Assembly: GCF_001194135.2 (NCBI RefSeq)
Contig: NC_068985.1
Location: 16,898,166-16,952,691, forward strand
Reading direction: 5' to 3'
DNA length: 54,526 bases
DNA from: Octopus bimaculoides
Taxonomy: Eukaryota
How positions within the stretch are numbered: position 1 is the first letter of the stretch; each line of letters opens with the position of its first letter. Under the pieces are notes generated by a model. The model was given only the letters and a program-made list of their open reading frames with translations. It did no database searches and was not told the DNA's origin. Shown here in pieces: positions 327 to 53,396 of this stretch. Position numbers and translations under genes: made by a program.

Positions 327-518
327 GGAGATCAGAAGTTAGGTTGTGAAACACAGCATTTGTAGTGACTTTAATGGCTTTAGCCAAGTATTGTTCATGA
401 GAAGGAAAAGTGTAGTGCATTGCTATTTCTTTCACATGTGTACTGATTGTGTTTTCATAATAATGAAGGAAATTATGTTTCATTCTCCTACTCAGGAAAG
501 TTTCCAAGATTGTTGCTC
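327..518 (-). CDS. Probable internal coding exon of a second minus-strand gene continuing past the window start (GATILETFLSRRMKHNFLHYYENTISTHVKEIAMHYTFPSHEQYLAKAIKVTTNAVFHNLTSDL)
   Basis: Acceptor ctacttttgctaatag|GA and donor CTCC|gtatgt; 192 nt, phase 1-1, open. The ending T.AVFHNLT is reminiscent of an FnIII strand in cytokine receptors, but identity is not established. Confidence 0.5.
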
Positions 519-749
519 CTATTAGCAAAAGTAGAATAGCAGCAAAAGACTATTAAGAGTGTACAATATCCATGAAAAAAAATGCACCCATTAAAAAGAA
601 AAATAAATTCCATAAAATACAAGGGTTGACCTCAAAGTAATGCAAAGGTGAGCCTAAGTTTTTTATTAAATGACATAAGTCATTCAATTTGTATATGTTG
701 GTAGAGTAACTATTCTTCCTGTTCATTTTTATTGCAGGCAAATAATGGG

Positions 750-1790
750 TTCCAAGTAGAAGCAATGTGCCATTATTGAGTTCTTGACAAAGGAGGGGTA
801 CAAGCTGCCATTATTGAGTTCTTGACAAAGGAGGGGGTACAAGCTGCCATTATTGAGTTCTTGACAAAAGAGGGGTACAAGCTGCCTGATTCAAAGAAGG
901 CTATAATTTGTTTACAAAGATCACATTATGGATGAAGTTTAAAGAGTAAACCAACATTGAAGATAACCCACTCGGTGGAACCACTGGCATGAATCACCAG
1001 CAAATGGATGAATTGATTTGCCAGAGGCAGATTAAATCCCTATTTGTCAACTTGCTGCACAGCTGGACAGTGGTTACAATACTTTTACAGAAGATGGTGG
1101 AAAACTTGGGGTATCAGGGATTTGAAAGAGAGAAAGGCAGGAATCTGTTCTGATTTGCTGGAAGCATTTGAAGCTAATGAAAACATTCTTCCTGATCTGT
1201 TGACAGGAGTGAAACATGGCTGTATCTTATATCCTTTAGATCAGAAAACAAAGCCTCAGTCCATGGAATGGTGGGTGTCACATTCTCTAAAGCTTAAGTT
1301 CAAGAGCCAGTGACTGGCACAGGAAGTTATGGTAACTGCCTTTTGGGAAGAGTGTCATTCTCTTTGATTTTCTTGAAGGTGACTATAAAATGGACAGTGA
1401 GTGGTACGTTGAAATGCTCAAAAGGTTTAGAGAACCCATTAGGAGGAAAACACTGAACAAGAATCTTAAAAACACTTAGACAATGCATGACCACATATAT
1501 TTTAGGCAATAAATCAGGCAAGCAGAAAAAATTGAATTGGTCAATGGCTCTCCATTTACTGTTACAGTCTGACCTGGCAACCTCTAACCTCCACCTGTTT
1601 GGTCTATTGAAGGTCTTTGGGAACAATAATTTGATGACAAAGTGAAAGTAGTGGTGAAAAAGTCGATACAACAGTGCATACAAGAAATTTTTCAAAGAGA
1701 ATTTGAGGGTTGGGTTCAACAATGGTGCAAATGCATCACTTGTATTGGAGACTATGTTGAGTGGTACCTTTGTATAGAGGAATGGTTACT
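750..1790 (+). mobile_element. Degenerate mariner (Tc1/mariner) transposase relic
   Basis: Broken frames with AIIEFLTKEG (N-terminal HTH), LLTG.ETW, KTKPQSMEW, KVMVTAFW, DNA.PH and a YSPDL-like segment ahead of LHLFGLLK. Confidence 0.8.
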
Positions 1791-1809
1791 GTACCAACAT
1801 CTACAAGTT

Positions 1810-2213
1810 AAATTACATCTGTCTGGCTTCCGTGCTAGTGGCCCGTAAATAGCACCATTTGAGCATAATCATTACCAGCGTCACCTTCTAGCACTTGTGC
1901 TGGTGGCACGTTAGAAAATCATTCGAGCGAGGTCATTGCCAGTGCTGCTGGACTGGCTCCTGTGCAGGTGGCACGTAAAAAACACCTTTTTGAGCATGGC
2001 CGTTGCCAGTACCATGTGATTGGCCCTCGTGCAAGTGGCACGTAAAAGCACCTACTACACTCTCGGAGTGGTTGGCGTTAGGAAGGGCATCCAGCTGTAG
2101 AAACTCTGCCAGATCAGATTGGAGCCTGGTGCAGCCTGCTGGCTTGCCAGTCCTCAGTCAAATCGTTCAACCCATGCTAGCATGGAAAGCAGAAGTATGA
2201 TGATGATGATGAT
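1810..2213 (+). mobile_element. SINE/LINE-tail family A ending in (GAT)n; other copies at ~20600-20820, 22650-22740, 35998-36130, 44243-44465, 49665-49920 (+) and 50955-51118 (-)
   Basis: Shared core gcacgtaaaagcacccactacactctcggagtggttggcgttaggaagggcatccagctgtagaaactctgcc...catgctagcatggaaagc in multiple copies within the window. Confidence 0.85.
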
Positions 2214-2879
2214 GTCAGTTAATAAAAAATGTTATGTCTACATTTGCGTTACTTTCAGGACAACTTTCATAGTTAACATTCAACATTATTATGAGTTAAA
2301 ACAAACTAAACAAGTTGCTAGATAGAATTGAAATGATAATTGCAAACATGTTACACATAGAATTGGTTGTCAAACCTTCAGAAATACAGCTAATGGGGAA
2401 CATTAAACAAATGAACAACAAAATATAGAAAATATTTAGAGGAAAAAGCAATATAGTCATTCAAGCTCTGTAATATTCCAATCCTAATGAAACCGTACCA
2501 TGAAATTACGTATTTATCAATTCAAAGAGGGAGCTTCTATGTGATTGCTTAACCTGCTAGAAATAGTAACTAAATCCAACATTCTCAAACAATATTTGGA
2601 TAATATAGTCCACAGATTTTGAAAACCACTTCCAGTGGGGGAATGACAACACAACCTCCTTCAACAACATTAAAATACAACCACTACAAGATTGTATTAA
2701 GGAAACAAATCTTAGAACACAAATTTCCTTTTTCATGAACACAGTTAAAGCCTTTCAAGCTGTTACAAATGCTAAACTCTTCCATCTGATTTCTTTATGT
2801 CATATATAAACATTGGAAAACTGTGTTGTAACAGTTTCTTCAGCCTTCATCTCACTAAAAAGTACAAGCGTGATCTACA

Positions 2880-3080
2880 TTAACCATTTAGCATTCAGAT
2901 TACTCTGTCAAATGTAATGCTTATTTATTCACGTTATTTTGAATCAATCAGGTATTATCTTGTAGCTTTGAGATTTTGATATGATTCTATATTTTTAGGA
3001 TAACAATTTAGAGTAAGAGTCTAGATCTGGCCAGTTCTAACATAAAACAAGTAGAAAATTTTGGCCAGTTTAAATGCTAT
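2880..3080. mobile_element. piggyBac-type MITE (degenerate)
   Basis: Starts TTAA-CCATTTAGCAT and ends ...TTTAAATGCTA; same terminus as the intact copy at 40844-40968. Confidence 0.55.
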
Positions 3081-3199
3081 AATAATTCATATAGGAGAAT
3101 CAACAGTCAAATTCTCCAAATTTGGAAGCTATACAAGAACAACAATTCTAAAGCTACAAAAACAAGTGATGTAACATGGACCCCCACCTCTTGTGCGCA

Positions 3200-3890
3200 C
3201 CCTCAAAAATTCTAGAAAAACTAATACATAACATCTTTAACCCCTTTCAGACCCAACCCTCATCTAAACTATAACACGCAAATGCCACGTAACTAATGAA
3301 TCTAACACAAAGAATACATGATGGCTTCAACAACAAAAAAACATCCCACTCATACCATTTTTACTACCATTGACATAAGTAATGCTTTCGACTTATTCCT
3401 TGCTAGCTCCTTATTCATAAGAGTACCTTAAAAAGCAACACAAAACACTGGCAAGAAAATCTGTTGCAACACAAGCTTATCTATTGTATAAGAACAACAC
3501 TTTCAGAATAAGCAATTTCCAGAATGTAACATTCCAGGCATCTGTCCTCTCACCCACGTTTTTCAATCTAGACTTACACAACCTTCCCATATCTCCTCAA
3601 AATATGTACATTTTTATATGCAGGTGACATCACACTCATTCAGAGACTTACTATACAAATACTCTAACCTTACATAAATCGCCAACATATCTTGCTTCAA
3701 AATAATAGACATAACGGTAACAGGTACCAAATACATTTTCTCCCTTCTTACCAGCAACATCATCAAATACAACCAACCATTACACTCAACAACATAAACA
3801 GAGAAAACAATAATACTAGCAACTACAAGGGCAGAGGGGAAGTCAAAAATTATCCATACTTTCACCATAACATATCTTTATTATTGTCAC
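3200..3890 (+). mobile_element. Degenerate LINE reverse transcriptase fragment
   Basis: Translated remnants IDISNAFD, SVLSPTFFNL and YAGDITL (YADD-like). Confidence 0.75.
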
Positions 3891-3894
3891 ACTG

Positions 3895-4085
3895 ACTTCT
3901 GCACATGCGTGCTTATAATTGGTACTGTTGTGGTCACATGATCAAAGTTTGAGCCTGATCACACCATTTTTCTTTCTTACTTTACAGTGTAAGCATACCT
4001 GCTCCACTAGCAATGTGCACTAAAGAAGAACAAAGAGCAATGATATGTTATGGCAAAAGTGCGGATAATTTTTGACTTCTTGTAT
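3895..4085 (+). mobile_element. 5' end relic of a mariner element
   Basis: MCTKEEQRAMIC resembles the mariner transposase N-terminus (TKEEQRAVIRF). Confidence 0.5.
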
Positions 4086-4738
4086 ATACAACATTTCCAC
4101 AACATTCAAAATAAATAGAAGACATTAAAAAACAACAATTTCATCATAGGCTCCACATTTGACGGAAAGTAAAAATAACCAAAATGTTCACAAAAAGTGA
4201 CTACATATCATCATGGATTGTACATCATAAACCGTTTCTATTTTTTTTTTAATATTTTGAGGATGATCAATAATGGTGAGGCTTAGTAGTGTGACCTTGA
4301 AAGTTATAGTTGCAAGCTGTTCATGTATAGTGGAGTGCAATTCCTGCACAATGAAAGAAAAAAAATGAAAGCATATTTGTATAAGCAAGGGGCATAGTTT
4401 GTTAGCAAGCCTCAACACACACTGTTTGATACCACAAAAAATCCCTTCCAAAAAACCTAGATACTTATATACAATACTTCAGAATGCTATGATAACATTG
4501 TTTTAATTTCCACTTTTCTAAGCTTGCATGGATCAGATAGAATCCACTGAAGTAGGCTTTCTGTGGCAAGATGCCCTTGTTACTAACCCTCATGTGTTTC
4601 CAAGCAATGTAATATATTCTCATGGCTGGATATGCTTCCATGGAAGACTGGAAATGAGGGATACCACTTTTATGACAGTGATGCTTGTTTACAAGTATAA
4701 CACAAGGAGACACAAACACTATACACACATATAAATAG

Positions 4739-4769
<31 letters not shown>

Positions 4770-4772
<3 letters not shown>

Positions 4773-5160
4773 AAAACAGGCTTCCATACAGTTTCTTATT
4801 TCTTTACTGCCCACAGGGGGCTACACACAGAGGGGACAAACAAAGACAGACAAACGGATTAAGTCCATTATATTGACCCCAGTGCTTAACTGGTACTTAT
4901 TTAATCGACCCTGAAAGGATGAAAGGCAAAGTTGACCTCAGAACGTAGCGGTAGACGAAATACAGCTAAGCATTTTGTCCGGCGTGCTAACGTTTCTGCC
5001 AGCTCACCGGCTTCTTCCAGTTTCTGTCAAGCAGATCGACTTACAAGGTTTTGCTCAGCCTAGGGCTATAGCTGAAGATACTTGCCAAAGCTATCAAGTA
5101 GTGGGATTGAACCCTAAATCAAGTAGTTAAGGAGCAAACTTCAACCACACAGCCATGTCT
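4770..5160 (-). mobile_element. tRNA-derived SINE family B interrupted by SINE family C (TSD cagtttct)
   Basis: Family C body lies between direct repeats at 4789-4796 and 5018-5025 inside a family B copy. Confidence 0.8.
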
Positions 5161-7919
5161 ATCCTAGTTTGTGTTTAAAAAAAAAAAAATGTAAAGGCCA
5201 TCCAGCTGAGTGGTGCAGACACTAATTGCTGTAATCATTAGCTTAAAGTTAAGCTGTTTCTTCTTTGTCTCTGTCATTGTAATACTTCGGGGAGCAAGTG
5301 CAGTGCCCATGACACTTTTCAGGGCCTTCAAAATTGGTGGAAGGAAAGAAAGAAGAAATTATGACTCACACGCTGCAGCAGTAGGAAACATCATATCAAG
5401 ACGCTGCATTATTCCCACAATAGCGACTTGGTCTAAATGCTTGCAAAAGAGCAGACTCTACTTAGGGTATTAAAGCACCAGATGGTTGTGTTAAACTGGG
5501 TAACAGGTTAACACAATAAGTAAAATACATATGACAAACTTTCTGCACGCTTTTCTGTCACCTCAGTTTCAGTTATCAGGCTTGGGTCAACCTAAGGCTA
5601 TAGTAGAAATAATCTGTCCTCTTAGTGTACAGTGGGATAGAACCCAGAACCACATAATTGTGAAGCAAACTTCTTTACACAGCCACATCTGTGTCCACTT
5701 TGTCTCACTTTCCTCCAAACCCTGCTCAGTCATTCATGTCTAGAACTATAGCTCTCAAGGACACATTCTTTGCCTTTGGTTATTGCTGGGATTATCGTAG
5801 GCACTGTCTATTCTCTTCTAAGAGGAAAAAAAAAAGTTTCTACTTTGGAGGACATATATTGCCACATCCTTCTGAAATGGCTTGAAAAGACTATTATCAA
5901 ACTAAACAATTTTTAGTTGCCTTTGATTTTGTAGTCTAAAATAATGCAAGTCTAAGGTTGAGCCATAAAAGCTACTAAACCTAACAAAGTCAGTCTACTC
6001 CTGTGAATTCACACACAAATTAGAGCAAAAGAGATTTTTCACCGAAATGAAAAAAAAAAAAGAAAATGATGTTTGACAGGGTTGTTGGAATGTGTGATTG
6101 ACAAGTGTTGTCCTCACTCCTTGTTCAGTTTATTACAATAACTATTTAGATATTTATAATCACAAATATCAGCTATATTTCACTCTTGACCCTATCATAT
6201 GCAAATTTCCAAGTCATATATTGATGGCAAATTTTAGCACAAGGCCAGCAATTTTAGGAATGGATAAGTTGATTACATCAACCTCAGTGTTCAACTAGTA
6301 CTTATTTTATCAACCCTGAAAGGGATGAAAGGATTTGAACTCAGAACAACAAATGAAATGCCATTAAGCATTTTGCCTGGCATGCTAATAATTCTGCCAA
6401 CTTGCTGCCTTAAATTTCCAGGTCATATCAACACAAGTTCATAATGCCTTTAATGAGATTTCATCCATAATTTCTCTAACATATGCAATTTTTCAAATTT
6501 TCCAAGATCATATCTTCACAAACAAGCTCAACTGGTCCTAATGAACACTTCAGGAAATATCTCTAAAGCAGACTGTCAATAGTGCAACATTCATTGTTGA
6601 AAATATTTCTTAGAAAGATAACAAAAAAAGAAAACGGTGGGGGGGAGGGGTTTCAAAAGAAGACTTGATGAAACAATTAGACATTGCTTTTAAAATCAAA
6701 TTAAAAGAAAATATATTTCAAAAATAATTTTTATATGCAAAAAAAAATAAATTATTTTCATTGTCTAAATGATTAAAAAAAAGAAGTTATGTACTAACAT
6801 TGGCTGTGGGTGGAATTTTAATACTAAGCTTTTACAATTATAGTGAGTGTTTTGACATTGACATCATGTATATAAGCACAACTACTGTGTCATTAACATT
6901 AGATAGTTATTGTTGAAGTGACAAAGTTTTGACAGTCATATTAACATAATAGCAAATATAGAACAAAGGTAGTTTTGTAGTTAGTTTTTTTTTTATAGTT
7001 TCTTATAAAGAAAAGAAACAAACTAAACTGAACATTCCAGTACAGAGCTGTCTACTTTTAAGTTGTAATTTCTATCAATTACCTTTGTTACAACTATTAT
7101 TTATAATAACAATACAGTATTATCACTTAATATCTTTCACAATGACGTTACAGGTAACAAAGTAAGAAAGAAGTTTTTAACATGGGAAAGTAATATGGTT
7201 CAACAAAAAGGAACTTTGCAGTCGCTTGTATTGTACGGAACTGTGATGCCTTCCCAATACTGCAAGTGAAAAATGTTGATCCATTTAGAGCTGTCAAAAA
7301 TAAGTAACACTGATATAGAGGTTGTTCATTCAACTCACTATATTTCTGTTTAAAAATGAAAAAATAAAAATAAAATAAAAATAAAAAAACTATAGTGTTT
7401 ATTCAAAAGAAAAAACTAGTTTAAAATTAAAATTTCTGACATGAGCAAAATGCCACAAATTGCAGGGAAGACATCAGAGTTAAACTAAAATCGACTCCAG
7501 TTAGTAACTGATGTTTATTTTAAGAAAAATAAAGCCCAGCAATACTTGAACTCAGAGCATAGCAGGACAAAACTGAAGACTGTTCTGCAATTAAACCAAG
7601 CACTATCATTTTTGGTTCTTCATGTAAGGGAAGGAAGAATCACTTATATGTGTGACAGTAACCATCATAAGGACGAAATAGATATGCATAAAAAACTGTC
7701 AACATTATTTCTAAACATAATCTAGATGCCTCCAGCCTTTCTGCAATTACTAAGATCACAACAATCTTTGAAACCACAAACGAACTCAGAACAAGTATTG
7801 AAAAATCTACGGTTGTTTACAATTCAGTTGAAATTATGTTACATGTGAAAGCATGGAAAATTAAAATCAGAAACAGTCAGGCCTAACAGAAAACTAAAAT
7901 CTATTGTGTCAATGTATCT

Positions 7920-9058
7920 ATTAAGAAAGAGATCTACTTTGGCTGCAGAATAATGAAGAGTTGTTAAGAAAACTAGTACAACAAACAGGGCAAGATCACC
8001 GACATAGTTGAGGTCAGAGAAATACAGGCTCTGCTGATGTCTTGATTGCTTCTGTTTGGGTTCAGTCGTGATTTTGCCCTTCGATGTGGCTCCACTACAA
8101 TCACCAAGAGTAAAGGAGCTGTACAGTCTCCCAGAGAATTCCTGTTATTGTTAGAAACTCTTTAGTTGGACCATCAATGTTTTGCACAAAGCTAACATCA
8201 CGAGGGGGATAGCTTTGGCCATCCTATCTGAGATGCCATAGCTCAACAGGATATGTAACACAGTCCTTCTGTTGAAACTACCTTAGGCCTTTGAGAAATT
8301 CACAAATACAGCTGATGCCTTTTGTTGGAGATTCTAAGATTTTCTTTGATTCTTCTAAGAGCAAGTATGTGTAATAATGTTGGTTTGTCTTTGCAGAAGC
8401 TGCTTGTTTCTCGATGCAAAGACTGGGTACAATAGCATCAATGATGATGAAAGTTACTTGTCAATTAGTTCCGATAATGGTACACAACCCAAGGAAGTTG
8501 GTGACTTCAAGTATCTTGGGTCCAATATTGCTGACAGTAAGAAAGACTCCCTGACATGCAAGGGACAAGCCGGAATTGCTCGTAACAGGTACAAAACATC
8601 TGGCAATTGAATATTTCAAAGTTAAAGAAGCTGGCCTTCTTCACAACAAGAGTAGATAGCATTCCTTTTATGGATCCAAAACCTGGACTGTGTGGGAGCT
8701 TCAAGACTGCCTTCATGGTACATGAAGGATTAAAACATCTCATGGCATAAGTACAAGATCAAAGAGGAGACTAATGAACATATTCTACATACATGCTATT
8801 GTCAATCAATGCAGGGTAGGATTTGGTGACCACTACTATTGTACTGAACAAAAAACCATATTAGACATGATATATAAGAGAATTCCACACTTTAATAGAG
8901 GATAAAGACCACACAACTACATTGATGTTATTGGCAGAGACACTAAACATGAAACTGAGGACCTACAAAAGCTAATGATAGAAATTCCTGGCACAGTGTG
9001 GTGAAACACATCTTTATTGCAGCCACTTGAACAATATATATATATATATATATATATA
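7920..9058. mobile_element. RTE-clade LINE with an inverted 5' segment
   Basis: The minus strand 8385 to 7920 encodes RRIKE..SAVFVNFSKA, GPTKEFLTITGI and LSDLNYVGDLAL...AAKVDLFLN. The plus strand 8405 to 9035 continues LFLDAKT...GDFKYLGS and ends in (TA)n. Confidence 0.8.
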
Positions 9059-9494
9059 CATACATGTAAAATGCTGGAGTTTATTGCCTTCTTTCAACAT
9101 GCCTGAATGTTATGACTCATCTCCTCAGACATGAGTCTTAACAACTGGGTATGTATATATAAATGTATGATTATATCTCTTTCATATAACTGTAAGGCAG
9201 CACAGAAATATTGGTGGCTAAAGCATATATATGCAGAGATACCATAGTGTTCAGGAAGACTTTTTAGTCTTGTCAAAAGAAGACCTTTCTAGAGCTGGAG
9301 TCATGAAAATATGCCCTCAGTATGGACTACAAAAAAGTTAGTGTTAGGGAGGGCATTCAACTGATGTAAATGAGAGTCATAGTTTCCTGGCCAACTCCAA
9401 GAAAGCAATAACTTAAACAAGGACTCTGACTTTAACAACCTGCCTAACCCATGCCAGAATGGAAAGCAAATGTATGATGATAGTGATGATTATC

Positions 9495-9543
9495 TATGTA
9501 TGTCTGTGTGTGTGTGTGTGCATATATACACACACACACACAC

Positions 9544-9624
<81 letters not shown>

Positions 9625-9630
9625 TATACA
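9495..9630. repeat. Compound (TG)/(CA)/(TA) microsatellite
   Basis: Directly visible. Confidence 0.95.
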
Positions 9631-9829
9631 TCAGTGTTTGATACTAGGTCATCAATTGTTTATTGTGGTACATTGTGTAGAGGATTGCCCTAGTCATTTT
9701 TCTCTGTTAGGAGTGAAAGGGAAGTCGACATCCCACTCCTCAGTTTATTGCCTAGCTAATAGGTAGTTTTAATACAGTTCACACTGTTGTAAGTTTTCAG
9801 ATCAGGTTCTCATTAGGACGTTATTATAA

Positions 9830-11720
9830 GCAGAGTGCACCAACAGCCTCTACATTTCCCAAGATGCCAAACCATAACTAAATCTGCTGAACAAATTCTC
9901 AGTATTTTCAAACAGCCGTTGACTACAATCCAGCCTAGATCCTACATCCTTATCCATGTAGTCTATATCTGCTGTCCAGGCTACACTCTTTACTCAAAAC
10001 TTCATTCAGATGTCTGCACATATGTAGCTTCCACTTTCTCTGCCACTCGCTTACCTCACCTAGATATCAGCAACAAAGACTTCAAGTGATTTTCTCCCAA
10101 TGTTTCTCTCCCTCACTCCTCCTGCCATTAACTACTCTCAGCTCATATCCCTTCTAACACTGAGGGCATCTATCTAACTTCATCCCTCTCCACAAAAAGC
10201 CATTTTGTCCTCACCATTTACCTCACCTCTTATCTCATACTGATGTCACCAGTGTAGAAACTAATCTTATGCAATCCTCAATTTTTCACATCAAATAGCT
10301 TCACCTTATCGTGTATTCTTCAAACATACATGATTGCACAATACATCTCTCACTTCCTGGACTCTATGGCACTTCAAATCAGGTTATTGCTTAGACCCCA
10401 ACAAGTTTTATACTAACTAGCCCAAAAAGTACTTGTGTGCTACCTCTAACCTGTCTGAAACAGCTAGCTGAGTAACTGAAATTATCTTCTTAGACATGTC
10501 CTCCACATTCCACAAACACCACAGCCCAAATCCCCCAACTCATAATTGTGCTGAAATAGTTTAGGCCAAAAAACATGGCTTACAATACTTGGAGAAAATT
10601 ACACACTCTTACAAACTGGATGGCTTGTCCCCAACATGGTAATTCCTGCAAGATCATCATTCAGACTTCAACTAAGTCATGAAAGTTCTTACAAAAGAGC
10701 TTAAAATATTAGGCCTCTCATGGTGAACCACTCATCAACACAGCAAAGCAGTTCTATTCAGCATGCAGTCTACCTGACCATATGCAATATAGCATGCAGT
10801 CTAACCCGAAACCCCAACTCAGATCAGGTCATTTCACAGCATACACTATGGATACTGTGGAAAACCACATGCTAAATTAGCAATGACTGTGCTTCCTTTT
10901 CAGAGTCCAAAAATATTTTGTCCCCAAAAAACTACTCTTTCTATTCTCCACAAAACTCAGGTGAGACCCACAACAGAGAACTGCTTCCACATCTAAGATG
11001 GTGCTGCAATTACTACACATACCGACATCCTAGACCATATCCAAAGAGAGATTACTTATGCATGAAATTACTCACAAACACAAATGGATCCATGTCTGTT
11101 TTCTCTTTCTACCTTCTTTACCAAAACATCTTTCAACTGGGACATGGAACCCTAATCTGATTCAACAGCAAAAGGAAACTAGCTATACATATCAAGAAAT
11201 GGTCTTGTATCAGAGCCCCTCTAATTATGAACAACAAGCAATTAAAAAGCCCTCAAAGTCACCACACATGCTAGACTTCCCAATTTCTGATTATATCTCA
11301 CAGTAATCTTAGATTGCCAGAGTAACATCCCAAAGACTAGGCTTTAAATACTATAACTCTGATTAGTTGCCAACTCTCTGTAAAGCTCAAGTAAAATTAA
11401 TGTTGGAATACAGCTTACATATCACTATCTCAACTGCAATAGCCTGTGCTTTTCTGAACTATCAAACTACATTCCCCCTCCCAAATCTCAGTTTCTTTAA
11501 ACTACTTTCTTACCTACATAGGTTTAAACTGAATACCAGCTATAACCGGCCCATCAGTCAACAAAAATGTAGTTGTGCTCAACTAATGAAAAAAAGAAAT
11601 TGCCAGCAGATATTGAACATTTGAAAGGCCTAATGCACTCAGATATAGTTTTATCCTAGTTTCCATGATGTAACCTCCACACATATAATTCAAATGACTT
11701 CTAATCTTGATCCCACTTGA
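9830..11720 (+). mobile_element. Old degenerate LINE (CR1/L2/Jockey-like RT region)
   Basis: C-rich, A-rich coding-like strand with remnant LPTLCKAQVKLMLEYS (typically TLYKAQVRPILEY). Confidence 0.55.
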
Positions 11721-28815: not shown

Positions 28816-28859
28816 GATTTCCATCTGTGTTACATCTACTTTGATTGCTCATCACTTAT

Positions 28860-34215: not shown

Positions 34216-34824
34216 TATAGAGTGTTATTATGGCTAGACAGTGTTGATCATATGTCTACTCCAATAAAGATAACTTGCAGCTAAGCAACAAACCGATCAA
34301 CCAACCAAAATATATAAGTGAGCCGTTTTGTGATCGCTTGACATGCTAGAAATAGTAGCCAAATCTTCCTCAAATCACACCCTACTATCTTGCTAAAAGA
34401 AAGACATATCAAACTATGTAATCAAAAACATAGGATAATCATGGCTGAAAAGGTTTTTATCATGAATTTGCTAAATGAGGCTGACCTAAGAGTAAACAAG
34501 AAGGAAGACCAACTACAACAGAACAATTTCATTCAAGAAAAGGCCATTTTATCTTTCCCAATCAAGATCTAAATAGAATAATTGAAATTTGAAAAATGTT
34601 CGTAAGTTTTTTGCCATTCAAAATAGAACTGTCACATTACTTACATGGAATCCTTAAAAATGTAGCTAAGTATGGTTTGTTAAGTTGTAAGGGCTTCACC
34701 TAAACAATCATATAAAGAAATGAAGAATAAACATACATTTAAAAAGAGACACTAAAACATGCACTTTTGATAATAATTACTATGTAAAAATAGACTATTA
34801 CTTTATGGATGTACATGAATTAGA

Positions 34825-43646: not shown

Positions 43647-46075
43647 GTATGTATGTATGTGTGTATGTATGTATGTATGTATATGCACACACACACACAC
43701 ACACACATACATGCATATCTGTTGTATAGGATGGCAGAACCAGCGTGTCAAGCAAAATACTTGGTGGTATTTGGTTATGTCTCTTATGTAGAGGTCAGCT
43801 TTGTTTTTCTTCCATATGTGGTTGCATAAAGGTTGATAGAATAAGTACCAGGCATCACACTAAAGCTCCTAAGATCAGTTAAAACTCTTGAAGATGCTGT
43901 TCCAGCATGCTCACAGACCATCAAGTGAAATCAGTTAAAATGCATGGGGTGGACAAACAGATACTAATTGCTTATGAATGTGAGTGTAAGAAAAATTACA
44001 CAGAAAAGAATAAAGGAAAAATGACTTACAGTAATTGTAAACTGTTCCGAAGAGTCAATAAAATCTGGTCTAAATTTGGCAATTGCTGTATGATTGTTCT
44101 AAAGAAATAAGAGAACCATTTTGTAAGAATGAGAAATATTTTATTATTATAAGAATATCATTTTGTAAAATATAAGAGTAACTTTTGTTTAGAGTATCAC
44201 TGATAGGTAATAAATTAAGAAACTTTTCATATACATACATACGTCGCCAGTACCCGCCTGAATGGCCCTTGTGCCGGTGGCACGTAAAAGCACCCACTAC
44301 ACTCTCAGAGTGGTTGGCGTTAGGAAGGGCATCCAGCTGTAGAAACTCTGCCAGATCAGATTGGTGCCTAGTGTCGCCTCTTGGTCCACCAGTCCTCAGT
44401 CAAATCGTCCAACCCATGCTAGCATGGAAAGCGGACGTTAAACGACGACGATGATGATGATGATGATACATACATACATACATACATACGTATGTGTGTG
44501 TGTATATGTGTGTGTGTATACATATATGTATGTGTGTATGTATACACACACACACATACATGCATATGCACACATATACAAATACATATATAGGATGTTC
44601 TCTAAAAAGTGCTGAATTTGAATTTGGCGACACTTTTGTGTTTTGAAGTTTGAAGACATGCTTTTATCATGTTTTCTATCTCTCTTCACTCTGATGAATT
44701 GTTTTTTGTTTGTTTTTCAGAATAGTGTGCCGTGTGCCATGGAGCAGTTTACAACTGAGCAGCGCATTCTCATTGTGAAGACAATTTTACCAAAACGGAG
44801 AAAGTGCGAAGTAAACAGCTCGAACACTTCGTACCATTTTGGGGGAGAAATGAAGCACCCAACGAATCTACGGTTCAAAGACTAATGATGAAGTTTAAAA
44901 CAACTGGTTCAGTTGCAGTGACCAAATTGCCTGAGCAGAATCGTTCTCGTCGGACAGAACAACAAATTGCTGTTGTGCAAAACAGTGTCACTCTGGGTCC
45001 AAGAAAATCGATTTGCTAATGTTTGCAGCTTTGGGCAACCTGACCACTTCATTACATCGAATTTTGCATAAAGATCTCCATATGCATGTGTACAAAATTC
45101 AACTTATGCAGCATATTCAGCCACCTGACTATGGGTTGTGGAGAGACTTGCAGCTGACAAAAATTTTGCAAAGGCCCACTTCCACTTGAGTGGATTTGTC
45201 AATAAACAGAACTGTCGCATTTGGGGAAATGAAAATCCTCAAATAATGCCAGAGTGTGAAATGCCCCCACTAAAAGTGACTGCTGGTGTGGTTTTTGGGA
45301 AGGTAGAGTTCTTGGAGCATTCTTTGAAAATGATGAAGGGAATGCAGTTACCATTAATGGAGAACGTTACTGAGACATGATATCCACTCAGTTATGGCTG
45401 AACTCTCTGAGAATCTGAGAAGACACCTAGTAAAGAGACAAGCAAGGGAAAGCAGTTAATGCATAGTAGCTAACTGCCCCATCAGTGACACAAATTTATG
45501 CCAACGAGTAAATGTTGTATATAGAATCCAATGTAACAAATGCAACAATGTCTATGTGGGTAGAACAATAAGACCATTACACATTCACATCAAAGAACAT
45601 CTAAACACGCGAGCCTCCTCCTTCAGAAAACATCAAAACAGATGCCAGACCACCGACAAAAGCATAACAGTCACAATTGAGGTCAATGGCTGAAATTTAG
45701 AGAATTTAAGAGTTAAGGAGATTGTCCTCATAGACAGACTAGGGCCCCAAATTAACAACAGGTTGGAAATTAACAATTAGTATATGATTTAACAACATCG
45801 ACACCCTGCACACTCATGTAACAAAACATTATATAAAAAAAAATTGCATGTACAATACATAACTTGGAAGCAGCACTGCGGATATGCTAACACACACATG
45901 CTCAAGACATGACTGCCCTCATGCACTTCTCATGAGGAATTCCAGACAAAGCTTCATGAGACCACTACAGGGATACTTCTGACAGATTTCAGTAACCATT
46001 GGAAAACCGACTATATCAGTGATTCCATTACTTCCTAGCCATTACTTACTTGTTGTGCCATTCCATACACATTAC

Positions 46076-46120: not shown

Positions 46121-47632
46121 GTTTCATGCAGGCATAGTGTGGATTCGATCCTTGATCGCCAAATTTCACTCAACAGTTCAGTACTTTTCTCATGGTAAAA
46201 CAATAGTTTTTCTGTGAGTGAACGCAGTTACATTTGCCAGATGCCTTTGTTAAGCAGAATAATGTCTTTGCCACTTAACCCTTCTAAGCTCTTCTAGGCC
46301 ACCAAAAGCTAGAATAGAGATAACAGACCACCTATGAAATTCATTGTTCTCAACAATATGTCTCTCCTTCTAACTAGTTTGGATAAATACTAAAACACTG
46401 TAGGTAAAAGGTAGTTGGCAAAAAGGAAATGACGCAGAGGCGACCACAGGCAAAATCCAGTGAGTGAGATAATTCAAGTGAGAGAAGGCTTACAGTGAGA
46501 ATGTCAACTATGATACAGTGTCTTATCACAACACCACAGCTGTTTAGATGTCAGGCACAATGAAGGTATCATTTTATCGACTTCCTACACTTAAACATTC
46601 ACTCTGTCTTCCTCTAATTCCTAGTTAGGCAGCTAGCAGTTGACCAAACATAACCAACAACAACATACAAGAAAAGATAACACTATTGTTTTTATTTGAT
46701 ACACACACCTGCCCGTCAAGGCATGTCATTATACAAAGTAACAGTAAATAAATATTTCCTTACAACTTTGATCACTGTTCTTCTTCCATCTTGCATACTG
46801 GCAACCAACACTTTAACAATAACCATTACAATTAGTGACTCTCGATTGCAACAAAGAATTAACCGTTACATATACATATGCATACATATTTCAAAATGCA
46901 ACCACATGTGAAGTCATGGGTGCTGTGTTGATTTTTAATTTTGTGAGCATATCCATGAGTGTTAGACATATAGAAGTCAAAAAGGTGCCCAACGTTGTTG
47001 TTGGAAAAATGATGGATGGTCGTGTGGTTGGCTGCCAAGTCATTTACCAGACGTTGGGGCTTTAATGTATCCATGTCCAGGAAAGCAAGAAGCTCAACGT
47101 ATGGTAGATGCCCGATGGCGGATATTCATCTGGTTGCACATTTCTGAACCAGATTCCAGGAGATTAATATGCCAAGCAAGATAGAGGTTCCAGGTGATGC
47201 AAACTCTAAGTATGGACATACTATAGTCATATACAGCTTTAAATAGACAGCTGGAGAGCAGCTTGATAAAGGAAGCATTTCCTCTCATCTATTATAACAT
47301 TTGTTTGATCAGTACCTTGAGGATAGAATTTAGTAGGCAGAAATTGTCTGGACATGAATAATCTAAGTTATCTTCCCTTATTGATCTCTTTATGGCTAGC
47401 AGGGCCACACCCAATGAATGAAACAAGCAAAAGAACATAGAATGAAGAAAACATTGTTATAATACAGTAAGAAGTCTTACCGCAGAAATTAGTAGAGATT
47501 TCACGACAGTTTGTCCTTCTTTCATCAGTTGTATCTTAACACAAACAACTTGTTCATTTAACTCAAGAACATGAAGTTCGAAGTTCTGATTGCAAGAAAT
47601 AACTTTCGCTTTGTGTGTCAAATTGATTATGT
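29418..47632 (-). CDS. IL17R: Interleukin-17 receptor-like gene (FnIII-like ectodomain, TM, SEFIR plus extension); spliced, 5' end incomplete
   Basis: Exons 47632-47481, 44098-44030, 41287-41212, 38593-38445, 36862-36785, 34699-34645, 33785-33705, 31730-31596 and 30349-29418 all have AG/GT boundaries and matching phases (1-0, 0-0, 0-1, 1-0, 0-0, 0-1, 1-1, 1-1, 1-stop). They give a stop-free ~575-aa product. Ectodomain NFELHVLELNEQVVCVKI...F..IDSSEQFTITI resembles IL-17RA D1 (ELSVLQLN..LCVRF...VDPDQEYEVTV, recalled from memory). TM is AIWILILVLILSLIICLFMIL followed by QRRK. Subtype (RA versus RD) cannot be assigned. Confidence 0.88.
31596..31730 (-). CDS. IL17R-like stalk plus transmembrane exon (VSFISTTSQPYFSTTHIQPLKGSSQGSAIWILILVLILSLIICLF)
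   Basis: Acceptor ttttcttttgatatattttag|TG and donor TTTA|gtaagt; 135 nt, phase 1-1; clear hydrophobic run. Confidence 0.9.
31778..31971. mobile_element. Tc1-type MITE just upstream of the TM exon acceptor
   Basis: TIRs cagggtaggtcaaaagt / acttttggcccaccctg, followed by TA. Confidence 0.7.
32384..32601 (-). mobile_element. SINE family C nested in family B (TSD agcttctta); other C copies at 6220-6412, 33370-33572, 38090-38300, 47870-48070 (-) and 41630-41830 (+)
   Basis: Direct repeats at 32375-32383 and 32602-32610; core cgaccccgaaaggatgaaaggcaaagttgacctcggcggaatttgaactcagaac. Confidence 0.85.
33705..33785 (-). CDS. IL17R-like membrane-proximal exon (CNWNTSSELQAKQNLCGDFEQETTLAP)
   Basis: Donor CCAG|gtgaga is strong. 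Acceptor ttttgtgtcaag|GT is weaker and completes a Cys codon. An alternative in-frame acceptor lies at 33764 (ttcttcag|AG). Confidence 0.75.
34645..34699 (-). CDS. IL17R-like ectodomain exon (VKPLQLNKPYLATFLRIP)
   Basis: Acceptor atgattgtttag|GTG and donor CCAT|gtaagt; 55 nt, phase 0-1. Confidence 0.82.
36215..36560 (+). mobile_element. 3' end of an RLE-type (restriction-like endonuclease; R4/NeSL/Hero-like) non-LTR element
   Basis: KEDTYGQLLQNLQLLY...FIPIIIGALG...KICKTFLKFQM*, followed by a short 3' UTR and an A-rich tail. Confidence 0.7.
36785..36862 (-). CDS. IL17R-like ectodomain exon (HHQTKKAQVFFNYSCFQECKRTYRVM)
   Basis: Acceptor ccttttttttctgaag|CAT and donor ATG|gtgagt; 78 nt, phase 0-0. 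Confidence 0.85.
38445..38593 (-). CDS. IL17R-like ectodomain exon (ECVSFHCKNEKEFLAISLSHLDKRTAKYNVSVTLKNDPLLITWCEQTFHM)
   Basis: Acceptor cttcctgtctcttgcag|AG and donor ATG|gtaaat; 149 nt, phase 1-0. Confidence 0.85.
40844..40968. mobile_element. 125-bp piggyBac-type MITE
   Basis: TTAA-CCTTTAGCAT ... ATGCTAAAGG-TTAA: perfect TIRs with TTAA target sites. Confidence 0.8.
41212..41287 (-). CDS. IL17R-like ectodomain exon (IRLLMEKQGGYYWSQVFKYENNAIP)
   Basis: Acceptor gttctgttatcag|ATC and donor CCAG|gtaaat; 76 nt, phase 0-1. Confidence 0.85.
42832..43049 (-). mobile_element. 218-bp mariner-derived MITE
   Basis: Perfect TIRs ttatccagaaagtttgtgccaattt flanked by TA; the interior encodes a mariner C-terminus (KPPQFWEEGIFKLKERWRRIVQQNGSY). 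Confidence 0.88.
43467..43564. repeat. 98-bp loop-less palindrome (one mismatch) at a contig edge
   Basis: agggattagcaattgagttgcttctccaacatactgaaaa|ttttcagtatgttggagaagcaactcaattgctaatccct; centre at 43515/43516. Confidence 0.95.
44030..44098 (-). CDS. IL17R-like ectodomain exon (NNHTAIAKFRPDFIDSSEQFTIT)
   Basis: Acceptor ctcttatttctttag|AAC and donor ACT|gtaagt; 69 nt, phase 0-0. Confidence 0.85.
44591..45400 (+). mobile_element. Degenerate Tc1/maT-like DNA transposon (5' two-thirds)
   Basis: MEQFTTEQRILIVK..., APNESTVQRLMMKFKTTGSV, RILHKDLHMHVYKIQL and AHFHLSGFVNKQNCRIWG.ENP. Confidence 0.82.
45490..45780 (+). mobile_element. Penelope-like GIY-YIG endonuclease fragment
   Basis: NVVYRIQCNKCNNVYVGRTIRPLHIHIKEH...KEIVLIDRLGPQINN. 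Confidence 0.78.
46900..47340 (-). mobile_element. CR1/L2-like LINE 3' fragment
   Basis: ILEFASPWN..HINLLESVQKCATR..HLPYVELLAFLDMDTLKPQRLVNDL...HGYAHKI (across frameshifts). Confidence 0.75.
47481..47632 (-). CDS. IL17R-like ectodomain exon (xIINLTHKAKVISCNQNFELHVLELNEQVVCVKIQLMKEGQTVVKSLLISA)
   Basis: Acceptor ttgttttttcag|AC and donor GCG|gtaaga; 152 nt, phase 1-0, open. Confidence 0.88.
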
Positions 47633-50861: not shown

Positions 50862-50899
<38 letters not shown>

Positions 50900-51119
50900 T
50901 GTAAGTATGTACATATATGTATGTATGAATGCATATGTATACATACATATATATCATCATCATCATCGTCGTCGTCGTCGTTTAACATCTGCTTTCTATG
51001 CTAGCATGGGTTGGACGATTTGACTGAGGACTGGTGAAACCAGATGGCTACAACAGGCTCCAATCTGATTTGGCAGAGTTTCTACAGCTGGATGCCCTTC
51101 CTAACGCCAACCACTTTGA

Positions 51120-51161
<42 letters not shown>

Positions 51162-52002
51162 TATATTATATATGTATGTATATATGCAAATTGTAACAAA
51201 TTTTTCAATACCACTTTGAATAATTTGAAAGAAGATACTGCTATTAAATAGTATTTCCAATTTGTTCAACTTTATTATTTAGATGATTTTTACACACATA
51301 CACACATGCATATAGACATAAGCATCAACTCTTGATTCCAATCTTCTGTGAAAACATGTCCACTGCAATAGCCATAGGCTGACTAAGCTTTTGTAAAAGG
51401 ATTTGGTAGACAGAAACTGAAAGAAACCCAATGTGTGTATGTGTATAAATATATGCGTATATGTAATGTATGTCTGTGTGTATGCATGTGTGTGTGTGTC
51501 TGCGTCTCTTTCTGTTGAGATTATACAATAGATGTATATGAGTATCAGCATAGTACAAGTCACGTCCTTTGTTTCTAATCTTCCTAGAAAATATATCCAA
51601 CCAAGGGAAAATATTACCTTGCATGGAAACAGGTGAAGGTTGTGGATAAGAAGGACATTCAGCCATAGAAAATCTTTATCAATGTCTCCCATCTCACTCA
51701 TGCAAGCATGAAAAAGTGGATGTTAAAACAATGATAATAATGTTTGTGTGTGTACAAAAGATGTCTCTGCTGTTTCAATCTATCAAATTATATACACTCA
51801 CCAGACATCAGTGAGCCACTGATTATGGTAGAAAATACTTATTTAGATTCCAAGCTGTGGAATCAAATACAGAATTAAATGGTTGTGAAACAAACTTCTT
51901 GATAACACAACTGTATCTGTCAGCTCAGAAGAAAGGTTTGTGTTTCGTAGCAATAAATATGATTATTAATGACAGATTTAAGAAAACTCAACTGATACTC
52001 AC

Positions 52003-52030
52003 AGTATGATACATTGGCAGCAGGGGTAAT
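52003..52030 (-). CDS. Possible 28-nt upstream micro-exon of the IL17R-like gene (ITPAANVSY)
   Basis: Strong acceptor tttccttttttcttgccag| and donor ACT|gtgagt; phase 0-1 joins exon 47632 in frame and adds an NVS sequon. No upstream partner exon identified. Confidence 0.5.
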
Positions 52031-52809
52031 CTGGCAAGAAAAAGGAAATATATTCAGTAAATACAGGAACTGATAATATTTTATGAATTCTAACAGGACA
52101 GAAAATAGTTTTGTATCAAAGCTGCTGTTATGTTTAAAAATTTGTTCTGAATGTTTATTTGAGAGCAGTAAAAGGTGATTAAAACAGTTTAAAACAGATT
52201 AAATTGTTCAATGCAACTATTTTTATTTAGTCCAACATCAGCTCAGATCAAGCAGACCCATAATCAAAGGCATTCCATTTGTGACCATCCTGTCGTGTGC
52301 GTGTGTGTGTGTGTGTGTGTGCGTGTGCATATATGTGTGTGTTGTGTGTGCATATATGTGTGTGTCTTTGTGTATGTATTTATGTGTGTATATCTGTTGT
52401 ATTTGTGCTTGTACATCCCCACCACTTGAGAAACGTTTTTAATAAGTCAAACCTATAAGCCATGAAGTTTTGCATAATCAAATGTTTCATTAGGTTCTGT
52501 ATGATCAAAGATGTTCCGTTACAGTTCAGTAGGCAGTCCTGGAAAAAGCTTCCACATTTGAAGCTCCCTTTACATCTCATTCCCCATTCCATACACTTGG
52601 AAAATATGCTCTAAAACCAGCCATCTCTGCTCATTAAGGCTCACCACCACATGCGCACATATACCAACACCAAGTATATCAATGTTCATTTCTACAGTTC
52701 ACCATCCTAGTCTAGCATTTTATGTATTGATCCCACTTCCCTAGAAGGTTGACAAGTAAAGTTGACCTCAGCAAAACACTTAAAATGCAAGGAGCCAGAA
52801 TAAATACTC

Positions 52810-53396
52810 CAATGCATTTTGTCTTATAGTCGGCTGACTCTTGAAATTCGTCATCCAAAGTTGTACATAAATTGAAGTTTGCCTAAAGTTATTTCATAGC
52901 TAATGTGGTCTCCATCACTGCTATTTGTGATATTTCATTGCTTGTTTGCTCGCCATCATTGTTTTGATGATACTTTATAACTATTTTGTTGTTCATTGAT
53001 GTTGTTTGTGGTGAGATGACTTATAACACTGCCACTCAGAGTTACGTCAGTTGGTCCTGCCAGTCCTGGTTAGTCCTGGTAATCTCCCTTCTGTAAGCTC
53101 TTCTACTTCAGAAACCAGAGATATCATTGGTATAATTTGCTGACTGGTTAGAAAAGTTAACAATATAGACTTGTTTCAGCACCAGTTTGTCCGAGCAGAT
53201 GAACAAGATGGTGCAGTAGTTGATTAGTCTAAAAAAGGATTACATATGCTCAGTTGTTGATACCATTTTGCCTGATTAGATGAACAAAATGATGCGACAG
53301 TTGACTGCTTTGAAAAGAGAGAACATAGGCCGCTGGTGCTTCTTGCTGTTACAATGGAAATTACAAATGTATAAATCATATACTGGATGATTGCTT
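52810..53396 (-). pseudogene. Possible decayed SEFIR-type exon of another paralog
   Basis: Acceptor atatgttaacag|. One frame reads PVYDLYICNFHCNSKKHQRPMFSLFKAVNCRIILFI*...FFRLINYCTILFICSDKLV..., protein-like for ~200 codons with scattered stops. Resemblance judged by eye only. Confidence 0.3.

What the first reader, a model, noticed from the sequence alone, without database searches (positions are those of the whole stretch)
327..53396. The whole window looks like a tandem IL-17R cluster undergoing birth and death
All receptor-like pieces lie on the minus strand: a possible decayed SEFIR exon (53396-52810), the intact receptor (47632-29418), a partial copy of its SEFIR extension (28815-28486), and a second exon series with ectodomain-like translation (12794 to 327) continuing off the window. 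Inference: local duplication of IL-17 receptors, mirroring ligand expansion, would be a little-described cephalopod cytokine-receptor system.
Basis: inference. Interest (0 to 1): 0.72.

Follow-up and report, generated by a model that had tools for sequence, protein, structure and literature searches.

The report
Octopus orphan receptor gene plus fragment
The window holds most of one uncharacterised octopus membrane-receptor-like gene and a short decaying copy of part of its last exon; a sister gene does lie next to it but outside the window, and nothing tested shows that these genes are interleukin-17 receptors.

Summary
The window is Octopus bimaculoides. On its minus strand lie exons 2-11 of RefSeq gene LOC106868483 ("uncharacterized protein", 621 aa). 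All ten exons are in frame with GT-AG borders, and no assembly gap touches an exon.

The partial copy at about 28.8 kb is real: 93% identical over about 320 nt. It is also present in O. sinensis, where a 14-nt deletion breaks the frame.

The "decayed SEFIR exon" (53396-52810) lies in intron 1. The "second exon series" (12794-327) sits among transposon relics. Neither resembles the gene, its family or SEFIR profiles.

A tandem paralogue does exist: LOC106868403, same strand, about 22 kb beyond the high end. The two ectodomains are 23% identical, but the cytoplasmic parts are 93% identical. That points to gene conversion, or recent transfer, of the last exon.

IL-17R identity is not supported. 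Pfam SEFIR, a SEFIR HMM, hhalign and Smith-Waterman tests were all negative while mussel SEFIR controls passed. The AlphaFold models were too poor to decide. The architecture (FnIII-like ectodomain, TM helix, alpha/beta cytoplasmic domain) is only compatible with an IL-17R.

The parts
52003..52030 (-).
   Evidence: Acceptor TTCTTGCCAG|ATT and donor ACT|GTGAGT. Part of the unique spliced solution. It is also the acceptor exon in the fused RefSeq model.
47481..47632 (-). Exon 3 (ectodomain)
   Evidence: 100% tblastn match to P0005 residues 48-97; splice solution.
44030..44098 (-). Exon 4 (ectodomain)
41212..41287 (-). Exon 5 (ectodomain)
38445..38593 (-). Exon 6 (ectodomain). This is the only ectodomain exon with detectable similarity to paralogue A (27% identity).
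36785..36862 (-). Exon 7 (ectodomain)
34645..34699 (-). Exon 8 (ectodomain)
33705..33785 (-). Exon 9 (ectodomain/stalk)
31596..31730 (-). Exon 10: Ser/Thr-rich stalk and transmembrane helix (AIWILILVLILSLIICLF)
   Evidence: A helix at residues 291-323 appears in the model.
29418..30349 (-). Exon 11: juxtamembrane region, conserved alpha/beta cytoplasmic domain (about residues 337-470), Asn/Ser-rich tail and stop codon
   Evidence: Conserved in four family members.
29355..30281 (-). Tract 96.3% identical to the last exon and start of the 3' UTR of the upstream paralogue LOC106868403. It has a sharp 5' edge 68 nt inside exon 11.
   Evidence: blastn within L007; identity matrices.
28485..28829 (-). 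Partial direct copy of exon 11 (codons for residues ~455-565, tail only, not the alpha/beta core), about 600 nt downstream of the stop. Open frame of 115 codons ending ...KITD*.
   Evidence: The orthologous copy in O. sinensis carries a 14-nt deletion.
52810..53396 (-). Claimed decayed SEFIR exon: ordinary sequence in intron 1 of the same gene
327..12794 (-). Claimed second exon series: no coding evidence. Contains a weak, mariner-like trace on the plus strand (about 780-1850).
21529..22011 (+). Mariner-type transposase relic, unrelated to the gene
   Evidence: Pfam Transposase_1, E 7.4e-08, above the curated cut-off.

Best explanation
The window is a stretch of an Octopus bimaculoides chromosome. 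By inference it is CM046605.1, about 16,898,166-16,952,691. It carries exons 2-11 of LOC106868483, called gene B here.

Gene B encodes a type I membrane protein. It has a signal peptide (exon 1, off-window) and an N-glycosylated all-beta ectodomain that probably consists of tandem FnIII-like sandwiches. These are followed by a Ser/Thr-rich stalk, one TM helix, a ~140-residue alpha/beta cytoplasmic domain and a ~150-residue Asn/Ser-rich tail.

The protein belongs to a very small family found so far only in Octopus and in a few unnamed transcriptome or metagenome assemblies. No curated domain model matches it.

Gene B is the downstream member of a head-to-tail pair. Gene A (LOC106868403) ends about 7.9 kb upstream of B's exon 1, outside the window. 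The A and B ectodomains diverged long ago (23% identity). Their last exons are kept about 97% identical at the nucleotide level within each species. This most likely reflects gene conversion over a ~0.9-1.4 kb tract.

About 600 nt downstream of B's stop lies an old ~330-bp duplicate of part of that tract. It predates the O. bimaculoides / O. sinensis split and is decaying.

The rest of the window is introns, transposon relics, SINE-like repeats and microsatellites.

Likely function (inferred, not shown): a cell-surface receptor in which a variable ectodomain binds ligand and the shared cytoplasmic alpha/beta module recruits a common adaptor.
For: - Species and gene: 100% match to XP_014769260.1 and a unique splice solution.
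- Family size: phmmer against 1.84 billion representatives found only three true relatives. The cluster listing shows two loci per Octopus species.
- Tandem arrangement: L007 places A's last exon at 56257-57207, B's exon 1 at 65122 and B's last exon at 103916-104845, all on one strand. In L008 (O. sinensis) gene A ends at 2677 and gene B starts at 10001 on the same strand.
- Divergence pattern: A versus B is 23% identical in the N-terminal part and 92.6% in the cytoplasmic part. The orthologues are 94% (B) and 82% (A) identical in the N-terminal part. Informative cytoplasmic sites split 6:6 between grouping by gene and grouping by species.
- Nucleotide identities: ObimA-ObimB 97.3%, which is at least as high as between orthologues (95.8-96.7%). 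The two downstream copies are 92.2% identical to each other but only 87-91% to the main exons.
- Tract limits.
- Ectodomain fold: 150 Foldseek hits at E<=0.001, the listed top 50 almost all tandem FnIII pairs, plus a weak Pfam fn3 hit in P0001.
- Cytoplasmic secondary structure alternates beta and alpha.
- The family HMM finds nothing else in the window or in the 115-kb locus.
Against: - Both structure models have low confidence (mean pLDDT 45 and 39), so the FnIII assignment and the alpha/beta description are only suggestive.
- The function is entirely inferred; no expression or binding data were available.
- Gene conversion is inferred from four sequences and 12 informative amino-acid sites. 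A fairly recent transfer of the 3' exon, combined with slow evolution, is not excluded.
- Window 1-19418 is not covered by the retrieved chromosome locus. Absence of a gene there rests on negative similarity and ORF statistics, not on annotation or RNA data.
- The word-indexed protein search missed a 100% identical protein once, so 'no further homologues' is weaker than it looks.
Confidence: 0.75

Rival explanations
1. One reading: B (and A) are highly divergent IL-17 receptors whose cytoplasmic alpha/beta module is a SEFIR domain too diverged for current profiles. They would signal through an Act1/CIKS-like adaptor in response to the expanded octopus IL-17-like ligands.
For: - The architecture matches: type I topology, FnIII-like ectodomain, and a TM helix followed at once by a beta-alpha-beta-alpha-beta module and a long extension.
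- hhalign places the octopus betaA-alphaA-betaB-alphaB-betaC on the same SEFIR elements in both runs.
- The best Smith-Waterman z-score, 3.3, is against mussel IL17R-D.
- TIR-domain structures appear among the non-significant fold hits (ranks 15 and 27).
- An octopus IL-17 ligand expansion is documented (PMC8353272).
Against: - Pfam SEFIR gave no hit at E<=10 for P0005, P0001, P0002 or P0003, while five mussel SEFIR fragments scored 1e-10 to 1e-22 in the same call.
- An HMM built from eight true SEFIRs, run with --max, hits no ORF of the window, not even exon 11.
- hhalign probabilities were 0.06%, 0.6% and 0.2%.
- Smith-Waterman z-scores were mostly around 0, against 5.9-25.6 among true SEFIRs.
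- The only near-invariant SEFIR residue (Trp in alphaB) aligns to Leu/Ile in the octopus family.
- A PDB profile search gave no IL-17R.
Confidence: 0.2
2. The lower part of the window (12794-327) holds the 5' exons of a third, downstream paralogue that runs off the low end.
For: - A few open frames have AG/GT borders, for example 518-327.
- The minus strand has slightly more long ORFs than a Markov simulation: 10 versus 4.8 +/- 2.2 of at least 76 codons.
Against: - The same excess is seen on the plus strand and in known introns.
- Nothing from tblastn, HMM, blastn or tblastx, and no significant Pfam hit.
- The longest ORF (1785-1330) lies opposite plus-strand frames that look mariner-like by eye, with only one weak Pfam hit (E 0.04).
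- Only two loci per species carry this cytoplasmic exon in the protein collection.
Confidence: 0.05
3. The downstream partial copy (28829-28485) is a functional alternative 3' coding exon that gives a shorter tail ending in KITD, as in O. sinensis isoform X2.
For: - The frame is open over 115 codons in O. bimaculoides.
- pN/pS between copy and parent is 0.41.
- The copy is retained at the same place in both species.
- RefSeq isoform X2 of the O. sinensis orthologue ends with the copy's C-terminus.
Against: - The O. sinensis copy has a 14-nt frameshifting deletion.
- All 54 junctions that reproduce isoform X2 lie at homologous positions, and none has a GT-AG pair. This pattern is typical of template switching or recombination between direct repeats.
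- The upstream edge of the copy in the window has no polypyrimidine acceptor.
- pN/pS of 0.41 is expected if only the parent exon is constrained.
Confidence: 0.1
4. The 93% identity of the A and B cytoplasmic parts comes from a single fairly recent replacement of one gene's 3' exon (partial duplication or exon capture) before the two Octopus species split, not from continuing gene conversion.
For: - The tract has a sharp 5' boundary inside the exon.
- Half of the informative sites group by orthology.
- Identities are all within 95.5-97.3%, so the differences are small.
Against: - Within-species paralogue identity (97.3% and 96.4%) is not lower than orthologue identity (95.8% and 96.7%).
- Six of twelve informative sites group by species. 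A single pre-speciation event does not predict this.
Confidence: 0.3

Closest known systems
IL-17 receptor family (IL-17RA/RB; mussel IL17R-A to -F), defined by the cytoplasmic SEFIR domain (Pfam PF08357)
   Same: Type I single-pass topology. All-beta, probably FnIII-like ectodomain. A beta-alpha-beta-alpha-beta cytoplasmic module starts about 15-25 residues after the TM helix and is followed by a long extension. IL-17R genes also occur as neighbours in mussels (PMC8353272 supplementary table).
   Different: There is no detectable SEFIR similarity by Pfam, a custom HMM, hhalign or Smith-Waterman shuffling, while the controls passed. The near-invariant Trp is missing. No IL-17R ectodomain Pfam family hit was found.
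Class I cytokine receptors and other tandem-FnIII receptors (IL-21R, IL-4Ralpha, IL-2Rbeta/gamma, prolactin and growth hormone receptors)
   Same: These are the best fold matches of the low-confidence ectodomain model, with about 200-220 aligned columns and Foldseek E down to 2.6e-06.
   Different: No WSXWS motif and no PxxP box 1. No Pfam hit. The cytoplasmic part is a folded alpha/beta module, not a JAK-binding linear region. TM-scores are low (0.3), and the model has a mean pLDDT of 39.
Tandemly duplicated receptor genes with region-restricted concerted evolution (gene conversion confined to one exon while the ligand-binding exons diverge)
   Same: Two head-to-tail paralogues. The ectodomains are 23% identical and the last exon is 97% identical at nucleotide level. 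Paralogue identity is at least as high as orthologue identity. The tract has a sharp boundary, and there is a leftover fragment copy.
   Different: Only two genes and one fragment are present, not a large array. The conversion is inferred from two species only.

Membership tests
IL-17 receptor family | Cytoplasmic SEFIR domain recognised by the curated profile (Pfam PF08357) | tested here: not met
   No SEFIR hit at E<=10 for the window exon, P0005, P0001, P0002 or P0003. Five mussel IL-17R SEFIR fragments scored 1e-10 to 1e-22 in the same scan.
IL-17 receptor family | Remote sequence homology to SEFIR by profile-profile or pairwise statistics | tested here: not met
   hhalign probabilities 0.06%, 0.6% and 0.2%. 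A SEFIR HMM run with --max hit no window ORF. Smith-Waterman z-scores were at most 3.3, against 5.9-25.6 for true SEFIR pairs. A PDB profile search found no IL-17R.
IL-17 receptor family | SEFIR (flavodoxin-like, TIR-related) three-dimensional fold of the cytoplasmic domain | tested here: inconclusive
   The AlphaFold2 models had mean pLDDT of 45 and 39. Foldseek against PDB gave no hit at E<=0.001 for the cytoplasmic model. The predicted order of strands and helices is compatible with SEFIR but not specific to it.
IL-17 receptor family | Ectodomain of two FnIII-like domains of the IL-17R type (Pfam IL17_R_N, IL17R_fnIII_D1/D2) | tested here: inconclusive
   No such Pfam hit. There were generic tandem-FnIII fold matches, with no IL-17R among the top 50. 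There was also a weak fn3 hit in P0001 (E 0.023).
IL-17 receptor family | Type I membrane topology with a signal peptide and one TM helix before the signalling domain | tested here: met
   The hydrophobic N-terminus is MTYILLLMVTIYFISS. The TM segment is in exon 10, followed by QRRK. Seven N-glycosylation sequons lie in the N-terminal 290 residues.
IL-17 receptor family | Binds an IL-17-family ligand and recruits Act1/CIKS through SEFIR-SEFIR contact | not testable with these tools
   This needs binding or co-immunoprecipitation experiments.
TIR-domain receptors | TIR domain recognised by Pfam TIR/TIR_2 | tested here: not met
   No TIR family hit at E<=10. Two mussel SEFIR controls did give weak TIR_2 hits.
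Class I cytokine receptors | WSXWS motif in the membrane-proximal FnIII domain and a proline-rich box 1 in the cytoplasmic part | tested here: not met
   Neither motif is present in P0005.
   Genes A and B lie head to tail in O. bimaculoides (L007) and in O. sinensis (L008).
   The family HMM hits only exon 11 and the 28.8-kb fragment. The regions 53396-52810 and 12794-327 are negative in all tests.

The most novel reading that the evidence does not exclude
Genes A and B encode a cephalopod-specific, extremely divergent STIR-type (SEFIR/TIR-like) cytokine receptor pair. They would have two very different ligand-binding ectodomains and one shared signalling module kept identical by gene conversion. 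They might serve the expanded octopus IL-17-like ligand family. Current domain models would miss this receptor class.
Probability: 0.2. Interest if true: 0.65.

Novelty: new member of a known kind. Interest (0 to 1): 0.3.

Why it matters
As submitted, the finding would have added an IL-17 receptor cluster to the octopus immune repertoire. That claim does not hold.

What remains is more modest. It is a lineage-restricted receptor-like gene pair that RefSeq lists only as 'uncharacterized'. Its cytoplasmic domain matches no curated family. It shows a clear pattern of ectodomains that have diverged to 23% identity while the signalling exon is kept about 97% identical.

For cephalopod immunology it is a reasonable candidate orphan receptor to test, for example by expression after challenge or by ligand and adaptor binding.

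For genome annotation it flags two probable model artefacts. One is the A-B fusion protein of 1149 aa in the newer O. bimaculoides annotation. The other is O. sinensis isoform X2, which is joined across direct repeats without splice signals.

Tried and rejected
- SEFIR membership was tested with Pfam, a PDB sequence profile, hhalign against 3-, 8- and 29-sequence SEFIR alignments, a local SEFIR HMM and Smith-Waterman shuffling. All were negative.
- The AlphaFold2 model of the cytoplasmic domain and of the full protein were both low confidence. Foldseek on the first gave nothing useful.
- I spent the last word-indexed protein search on a SEFIR alignment, hoping to retrieve octopus IL-17Rs. It returned only 32 SEFIR-domain fragments, the named ones vertebrate IL-17RA/RB, so I could not list the bona fide octopus SEFIR genes.
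- I first read the contrast '88% cytoplasmic versus 25% ectodomain identity to O. sinensis P0001' as hyper-divergent orthologues or alternative ectodomain cassettes. I rejected this once the cluster listing showed that P0001 belongs to paralogue A and P0046 is the true orthologue.
- I considered the O. sinensis X2 isoform as proof that the copy is a used exon. I rejected this because no canonical splice pair exists and the copy is frameshifted there.
- Exact-product look-ups of P0001 and P0005 found nothing.
- Rfam and tRNA scans of the window were empty.
- A literature search for the locus names found nothing.
- I considered an assembly artefact for the copy and rejected it. The copy is 7% diverged from the parent, has no adjacent gap, and is present in a second species.

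Full report
**Origin and gaps**

The window has eight N runs. A protein search with the long minus-strand ORF 30356-29421 first found only O. sinensis XP_036359090 (P0001; 88% identity). A profile search then found O. bimaculoides XP_014769260.1, 'uncharacterized protein LOC106868483 isoform X1' (P0005, 621 aa), at 100% identity.

A splice-aware search gave one solution for residues 38-621. All exons are on the minus strand with GT-AG borders:

| Exon | Window coordinates |
|---|---|
| 2 | 52030-52003 |
| 3 | 47632-47481 |
| 4 | 44098-44030 |
| 5 | 41287-41212 |
| 6 | 38593-38445 |
| 7 | 36862-36785 |
| 8 | 34699-34645 |
| 9 | 33785-33705 |
| 10 | 31730-31596 |
| 11 | 30349-29418 |

No N run touches an exon. 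The gap-free O. sinensis locus shows the same exon series. The gaps are therefore harmless for the coding sequence.

Exon 1 (MTYILLL..., the signal peptide) is not in the window.

1. The 'intact receptor' is real, and its stated ends are exact. It is not complete in the window, however, and exon 2 was missed.
2. The partial copy is real. Window 28492-28810 is 93.4% identical to 29596-29914 (E 7e-134). With looser scoring the match is 91% over 348 nt. It is in frame for 115 codons and ends in KITD*. It covers only the tail (residues ~455-565), not the alpha/beta core.
3. The 53396-52810 segment has 14 stops in the stated frame and lies in intron 1. tblastn with P0001, P0005, P0050, P0052 and P0046 found nothing better than E of about 7. 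The family and SEFIR HMMs gave a best E of 9.6. blastn and tblastx against the CDS gave only chance-level hits. Pfam found nothing on its open frames.
4. The 12794-327 series is negative in the same tests.
   - The ten best minus-strand frames have no significant Pfam hit.
   - The number of ORFs of at least 76 codons (10 in 13 kb) matches the plus strand (11) and known introns (17 and 22 in 20.8 kb).
   - The longest ORF (1785-1330) lies opposite plus-strand frames that look mariner-like by eye; Pfam gave only one weak hit there, Transposase_1 at E 0.04.

**What the gene encodes**

P0005 has these features:
- a hydrophobic N-terminus;
- seven N-glycosylation sequons and ten Cys residues in the first 290 residues;
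- a Ser/Thr-rich stalk;
- a TM helix followed by QRRK;
- a cytoplasmic region that is conserved across the family.

The full-length AlphaFold2 model is poor (pLDDT 39). It predicts an all-beta ectodomain and an alternating beta/alpha cytoplasmic module. Foldseek gave 150 hits at E<=0.001, and the listed top 50 are almost all tandem FnIII pairs from cytokine receptors and fibronectin. I take this as suggestive only.

**Is it an IL-17 receptor?**

Pfam finds no SEFIR, TIR or IL-17R ectodomain family in any of four family members at E<=10.

As positive controls I took five mussel IL-17R SEFIR fragments from the supplement of PMC8353272, plus human and mouse IL-17RA/RB SEFIR sequences read from PDB alignments. 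The mussel fragments hit Pfam SEFIR at 1e-10 to 1e-22.

The further tests were as follows:
- An HMM of the eight true SEFIRs, run with --max, hits no ORF of the window.
- hhalign of the family profile against SEFIR alignments of 3, 8 and 29 sequences gave probabilities of 0.06%, 0.6% and 0.2%. Both longer alignments did place the octopus betaA-alphaA-betaB-alphaB-betaC on the matching SEFIR elements.
- Smith-Waterman z-scores were at most 3.3, against 5.9-25.6 among true SEFIRs.
- The near-invariant SEFIR Trp is not conserved in the octopus family.
- The cytoplasmic-domain model (pLDDT 45) found no significant fold match.

The architecture is therefore IL-17R-like, but membership is untested at fold level and failed at sequence level. 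I put the SEFIR reading at about 0.2.

**The real cluster**

The 90%-identity cluster of P0005 contains a second O. bimaculoides locus, LOC106868403 ('A'), and the O. sinensis locus LOC115212086. P0001 belongs to a different O. sinensis locus, LOC115212051.

The chromosome locus L007 (CM046605.1, 114.8 kb) shows this layout on one strand:

| Feature | L007 position |
|---|---|
| A exon 1 | 10001 |
| A last exon | 56257-57207 |
| B exon 1 (ATG) | 65122 |
| B exon 2 | 82236-82263 |
| B last exon | 103916-104845 |
| Partial copy | 105449-105781 |

Window coordinate = 134266 minus L007 position, and the same N runs are present. The window's high end abuts a 2.3-kb gap. B's exon 1 lies 14.6 kb beyond that end, and A's last exon about 22.5 kb beyond it.

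O. sinensis has the same order: A ends at L008 position 2677 and B spans 10001-60011.

The family HMM finds only A's last exon, B's last exon and the fragment in these loci.

**Evolution of the pair**

| Comparison | N-terminal part (aa identity) | Cytoplasmic part (aa identity) |
|---|---|---|
| A vs B, same species | 23% | 92.3-92.6% |
| B orthologues | 94% | 91.9% |
| A orthologues | 82% | 93.0% |

Informative cytoplasmic sites split 6 by gene and 6 by species.

At nucleotide level over 332 columns:
- ObimA-ObimB 97.3% and OsinA-OsinB 96.4%;
- orthologues 95.8% (B) and 96.7% (A).

The high-identity tract runs from 68 nt inside exon 11 to about 65 nt past the stop (window 30281-29355; 927 bp at 96.3%). 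In O. sinensis it is 1444 bp long. This is the pattern of gene conversion confined to the 3' exon. A single earlier exon transfer is the main alternative.

The two downstream fragments are closer to each other (92.2%) than to any main exon (87-91%), so the fragment predates the species split. The O. sinensis fragment has a 14-nt frameshifting deletion.

O. sinensis isoform X2 ends in the fragment's KITD*. None of the 54 junctions that reproduce it has a GT-AG pair. I regard it as a repeat-mediated artefact or a recombinant allele.

**Verdict**

- Observation: partly confirmed, with two of four pieces real.
- Interpretation: partly supported. A tandem pair and a decaying fragment exist, but the second gene is off the other end of the window, the window itself holds one gene, and the IL-17R label is unsupported.
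- Novelty: an annotated but uncharacterised, lineage-restricted receptor-like family, i.e. a new member of a known kind.
- Interest: 0.3.

Noticed in passing
L007 57085-57110 and 82236-82263 (window 52030-52003): The newer RefSeq models XP_014769126.2 and XP_014769143.2 (1149 and 1096 aa) fuse gene A to gene B. They use a cryptic GTAAGT donor inside A's last exon (after ...GGDS) and the acceptor of B's exon 2. This is either a read-through transcript or a merged gene model. The older annotation kept two genes.
   Followed up: partly
L008 58804-58857 and 59897-59950: O. sinensis isoform X2 (XP_036359088.1) joins the main last exon to the downstream copy at homologous positions. None of the 54 possible junctions has a GT-AG pair. 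This suggests template switching or recombination between direct repeats rather than splicing.
   Followed up: yes
window 21529-22011 (+), 27371-27739 (-), about 780-1850 (+): Mariner/Tc1-type transposase relics. The first passes the Pfam Transposase_1 cut-off. The second matches the usual mariner C-terminal motif only by eye. The third has one weak Pfam hit (E 0.04).
   Followed up: partly
window 1941-2214, 35996-36142, 44242-44488, 49660-49922, 50934-51120: A ~250-bp interspersed repeat (86-96% identity between copies, in both orientations), probably a SINE. Its translation (LQSDLAEFLQLDALPNANHSE...) produces misleading open frames. There was no tRNA or Rfam match.
   Followed up: partly
window 16842-18377, 31013-31464, 32038-32383: A second repeat family (75-90% identity) flanks the gap at 31224-31260. 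It lies in the intron between exons 10 and 11 and in the intergenic region.
   Followed up: no
window 36114-36467 (+) and 8359-8607 (+): These open frames look, from my own knowledge, like the C-terminal tails of non-LTR retrotransposon proteins (...IIGALG..., ...FKYLGS...). Pfam gave no significant hit for the second. The first was not scanned.
   Followed up: no
window 54526 (= L007 79740): The window's high end lies directly next to a 2327-bp N run in the chromosome assembly (L007 77413-79739). All window gaps are unchanged in the chromosome-level assembly GCA_001194135.2.
   Followed up: yes
The word-indexed protein search with exon 11 did not return the 100% identical RefSeq protein. A later profile search did. 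'No further hit' from that tool is therefore weak evidence.
   Followed up: no
L009 10001-11104: Family member P0003 is a prokaryote-style ORF call on a 233-kb eukaryotic contig in an ENA metagenome assembly (ERZ21867824). In effect it is the last exon of a homologue from an unidentified animal. P0002 comes from RNA-seq assemblies (SRR29271474 and others) of unknown species.
   Followed up: partly
window 26443-26766, 9447-9766, 47681-47913, 48136-49135: Long microsatellite and low-complexity tracts (TA/CA, ATG/ATC-type) create many spurious ORFs, several of them next to assembly gaps.
   Followed up: no
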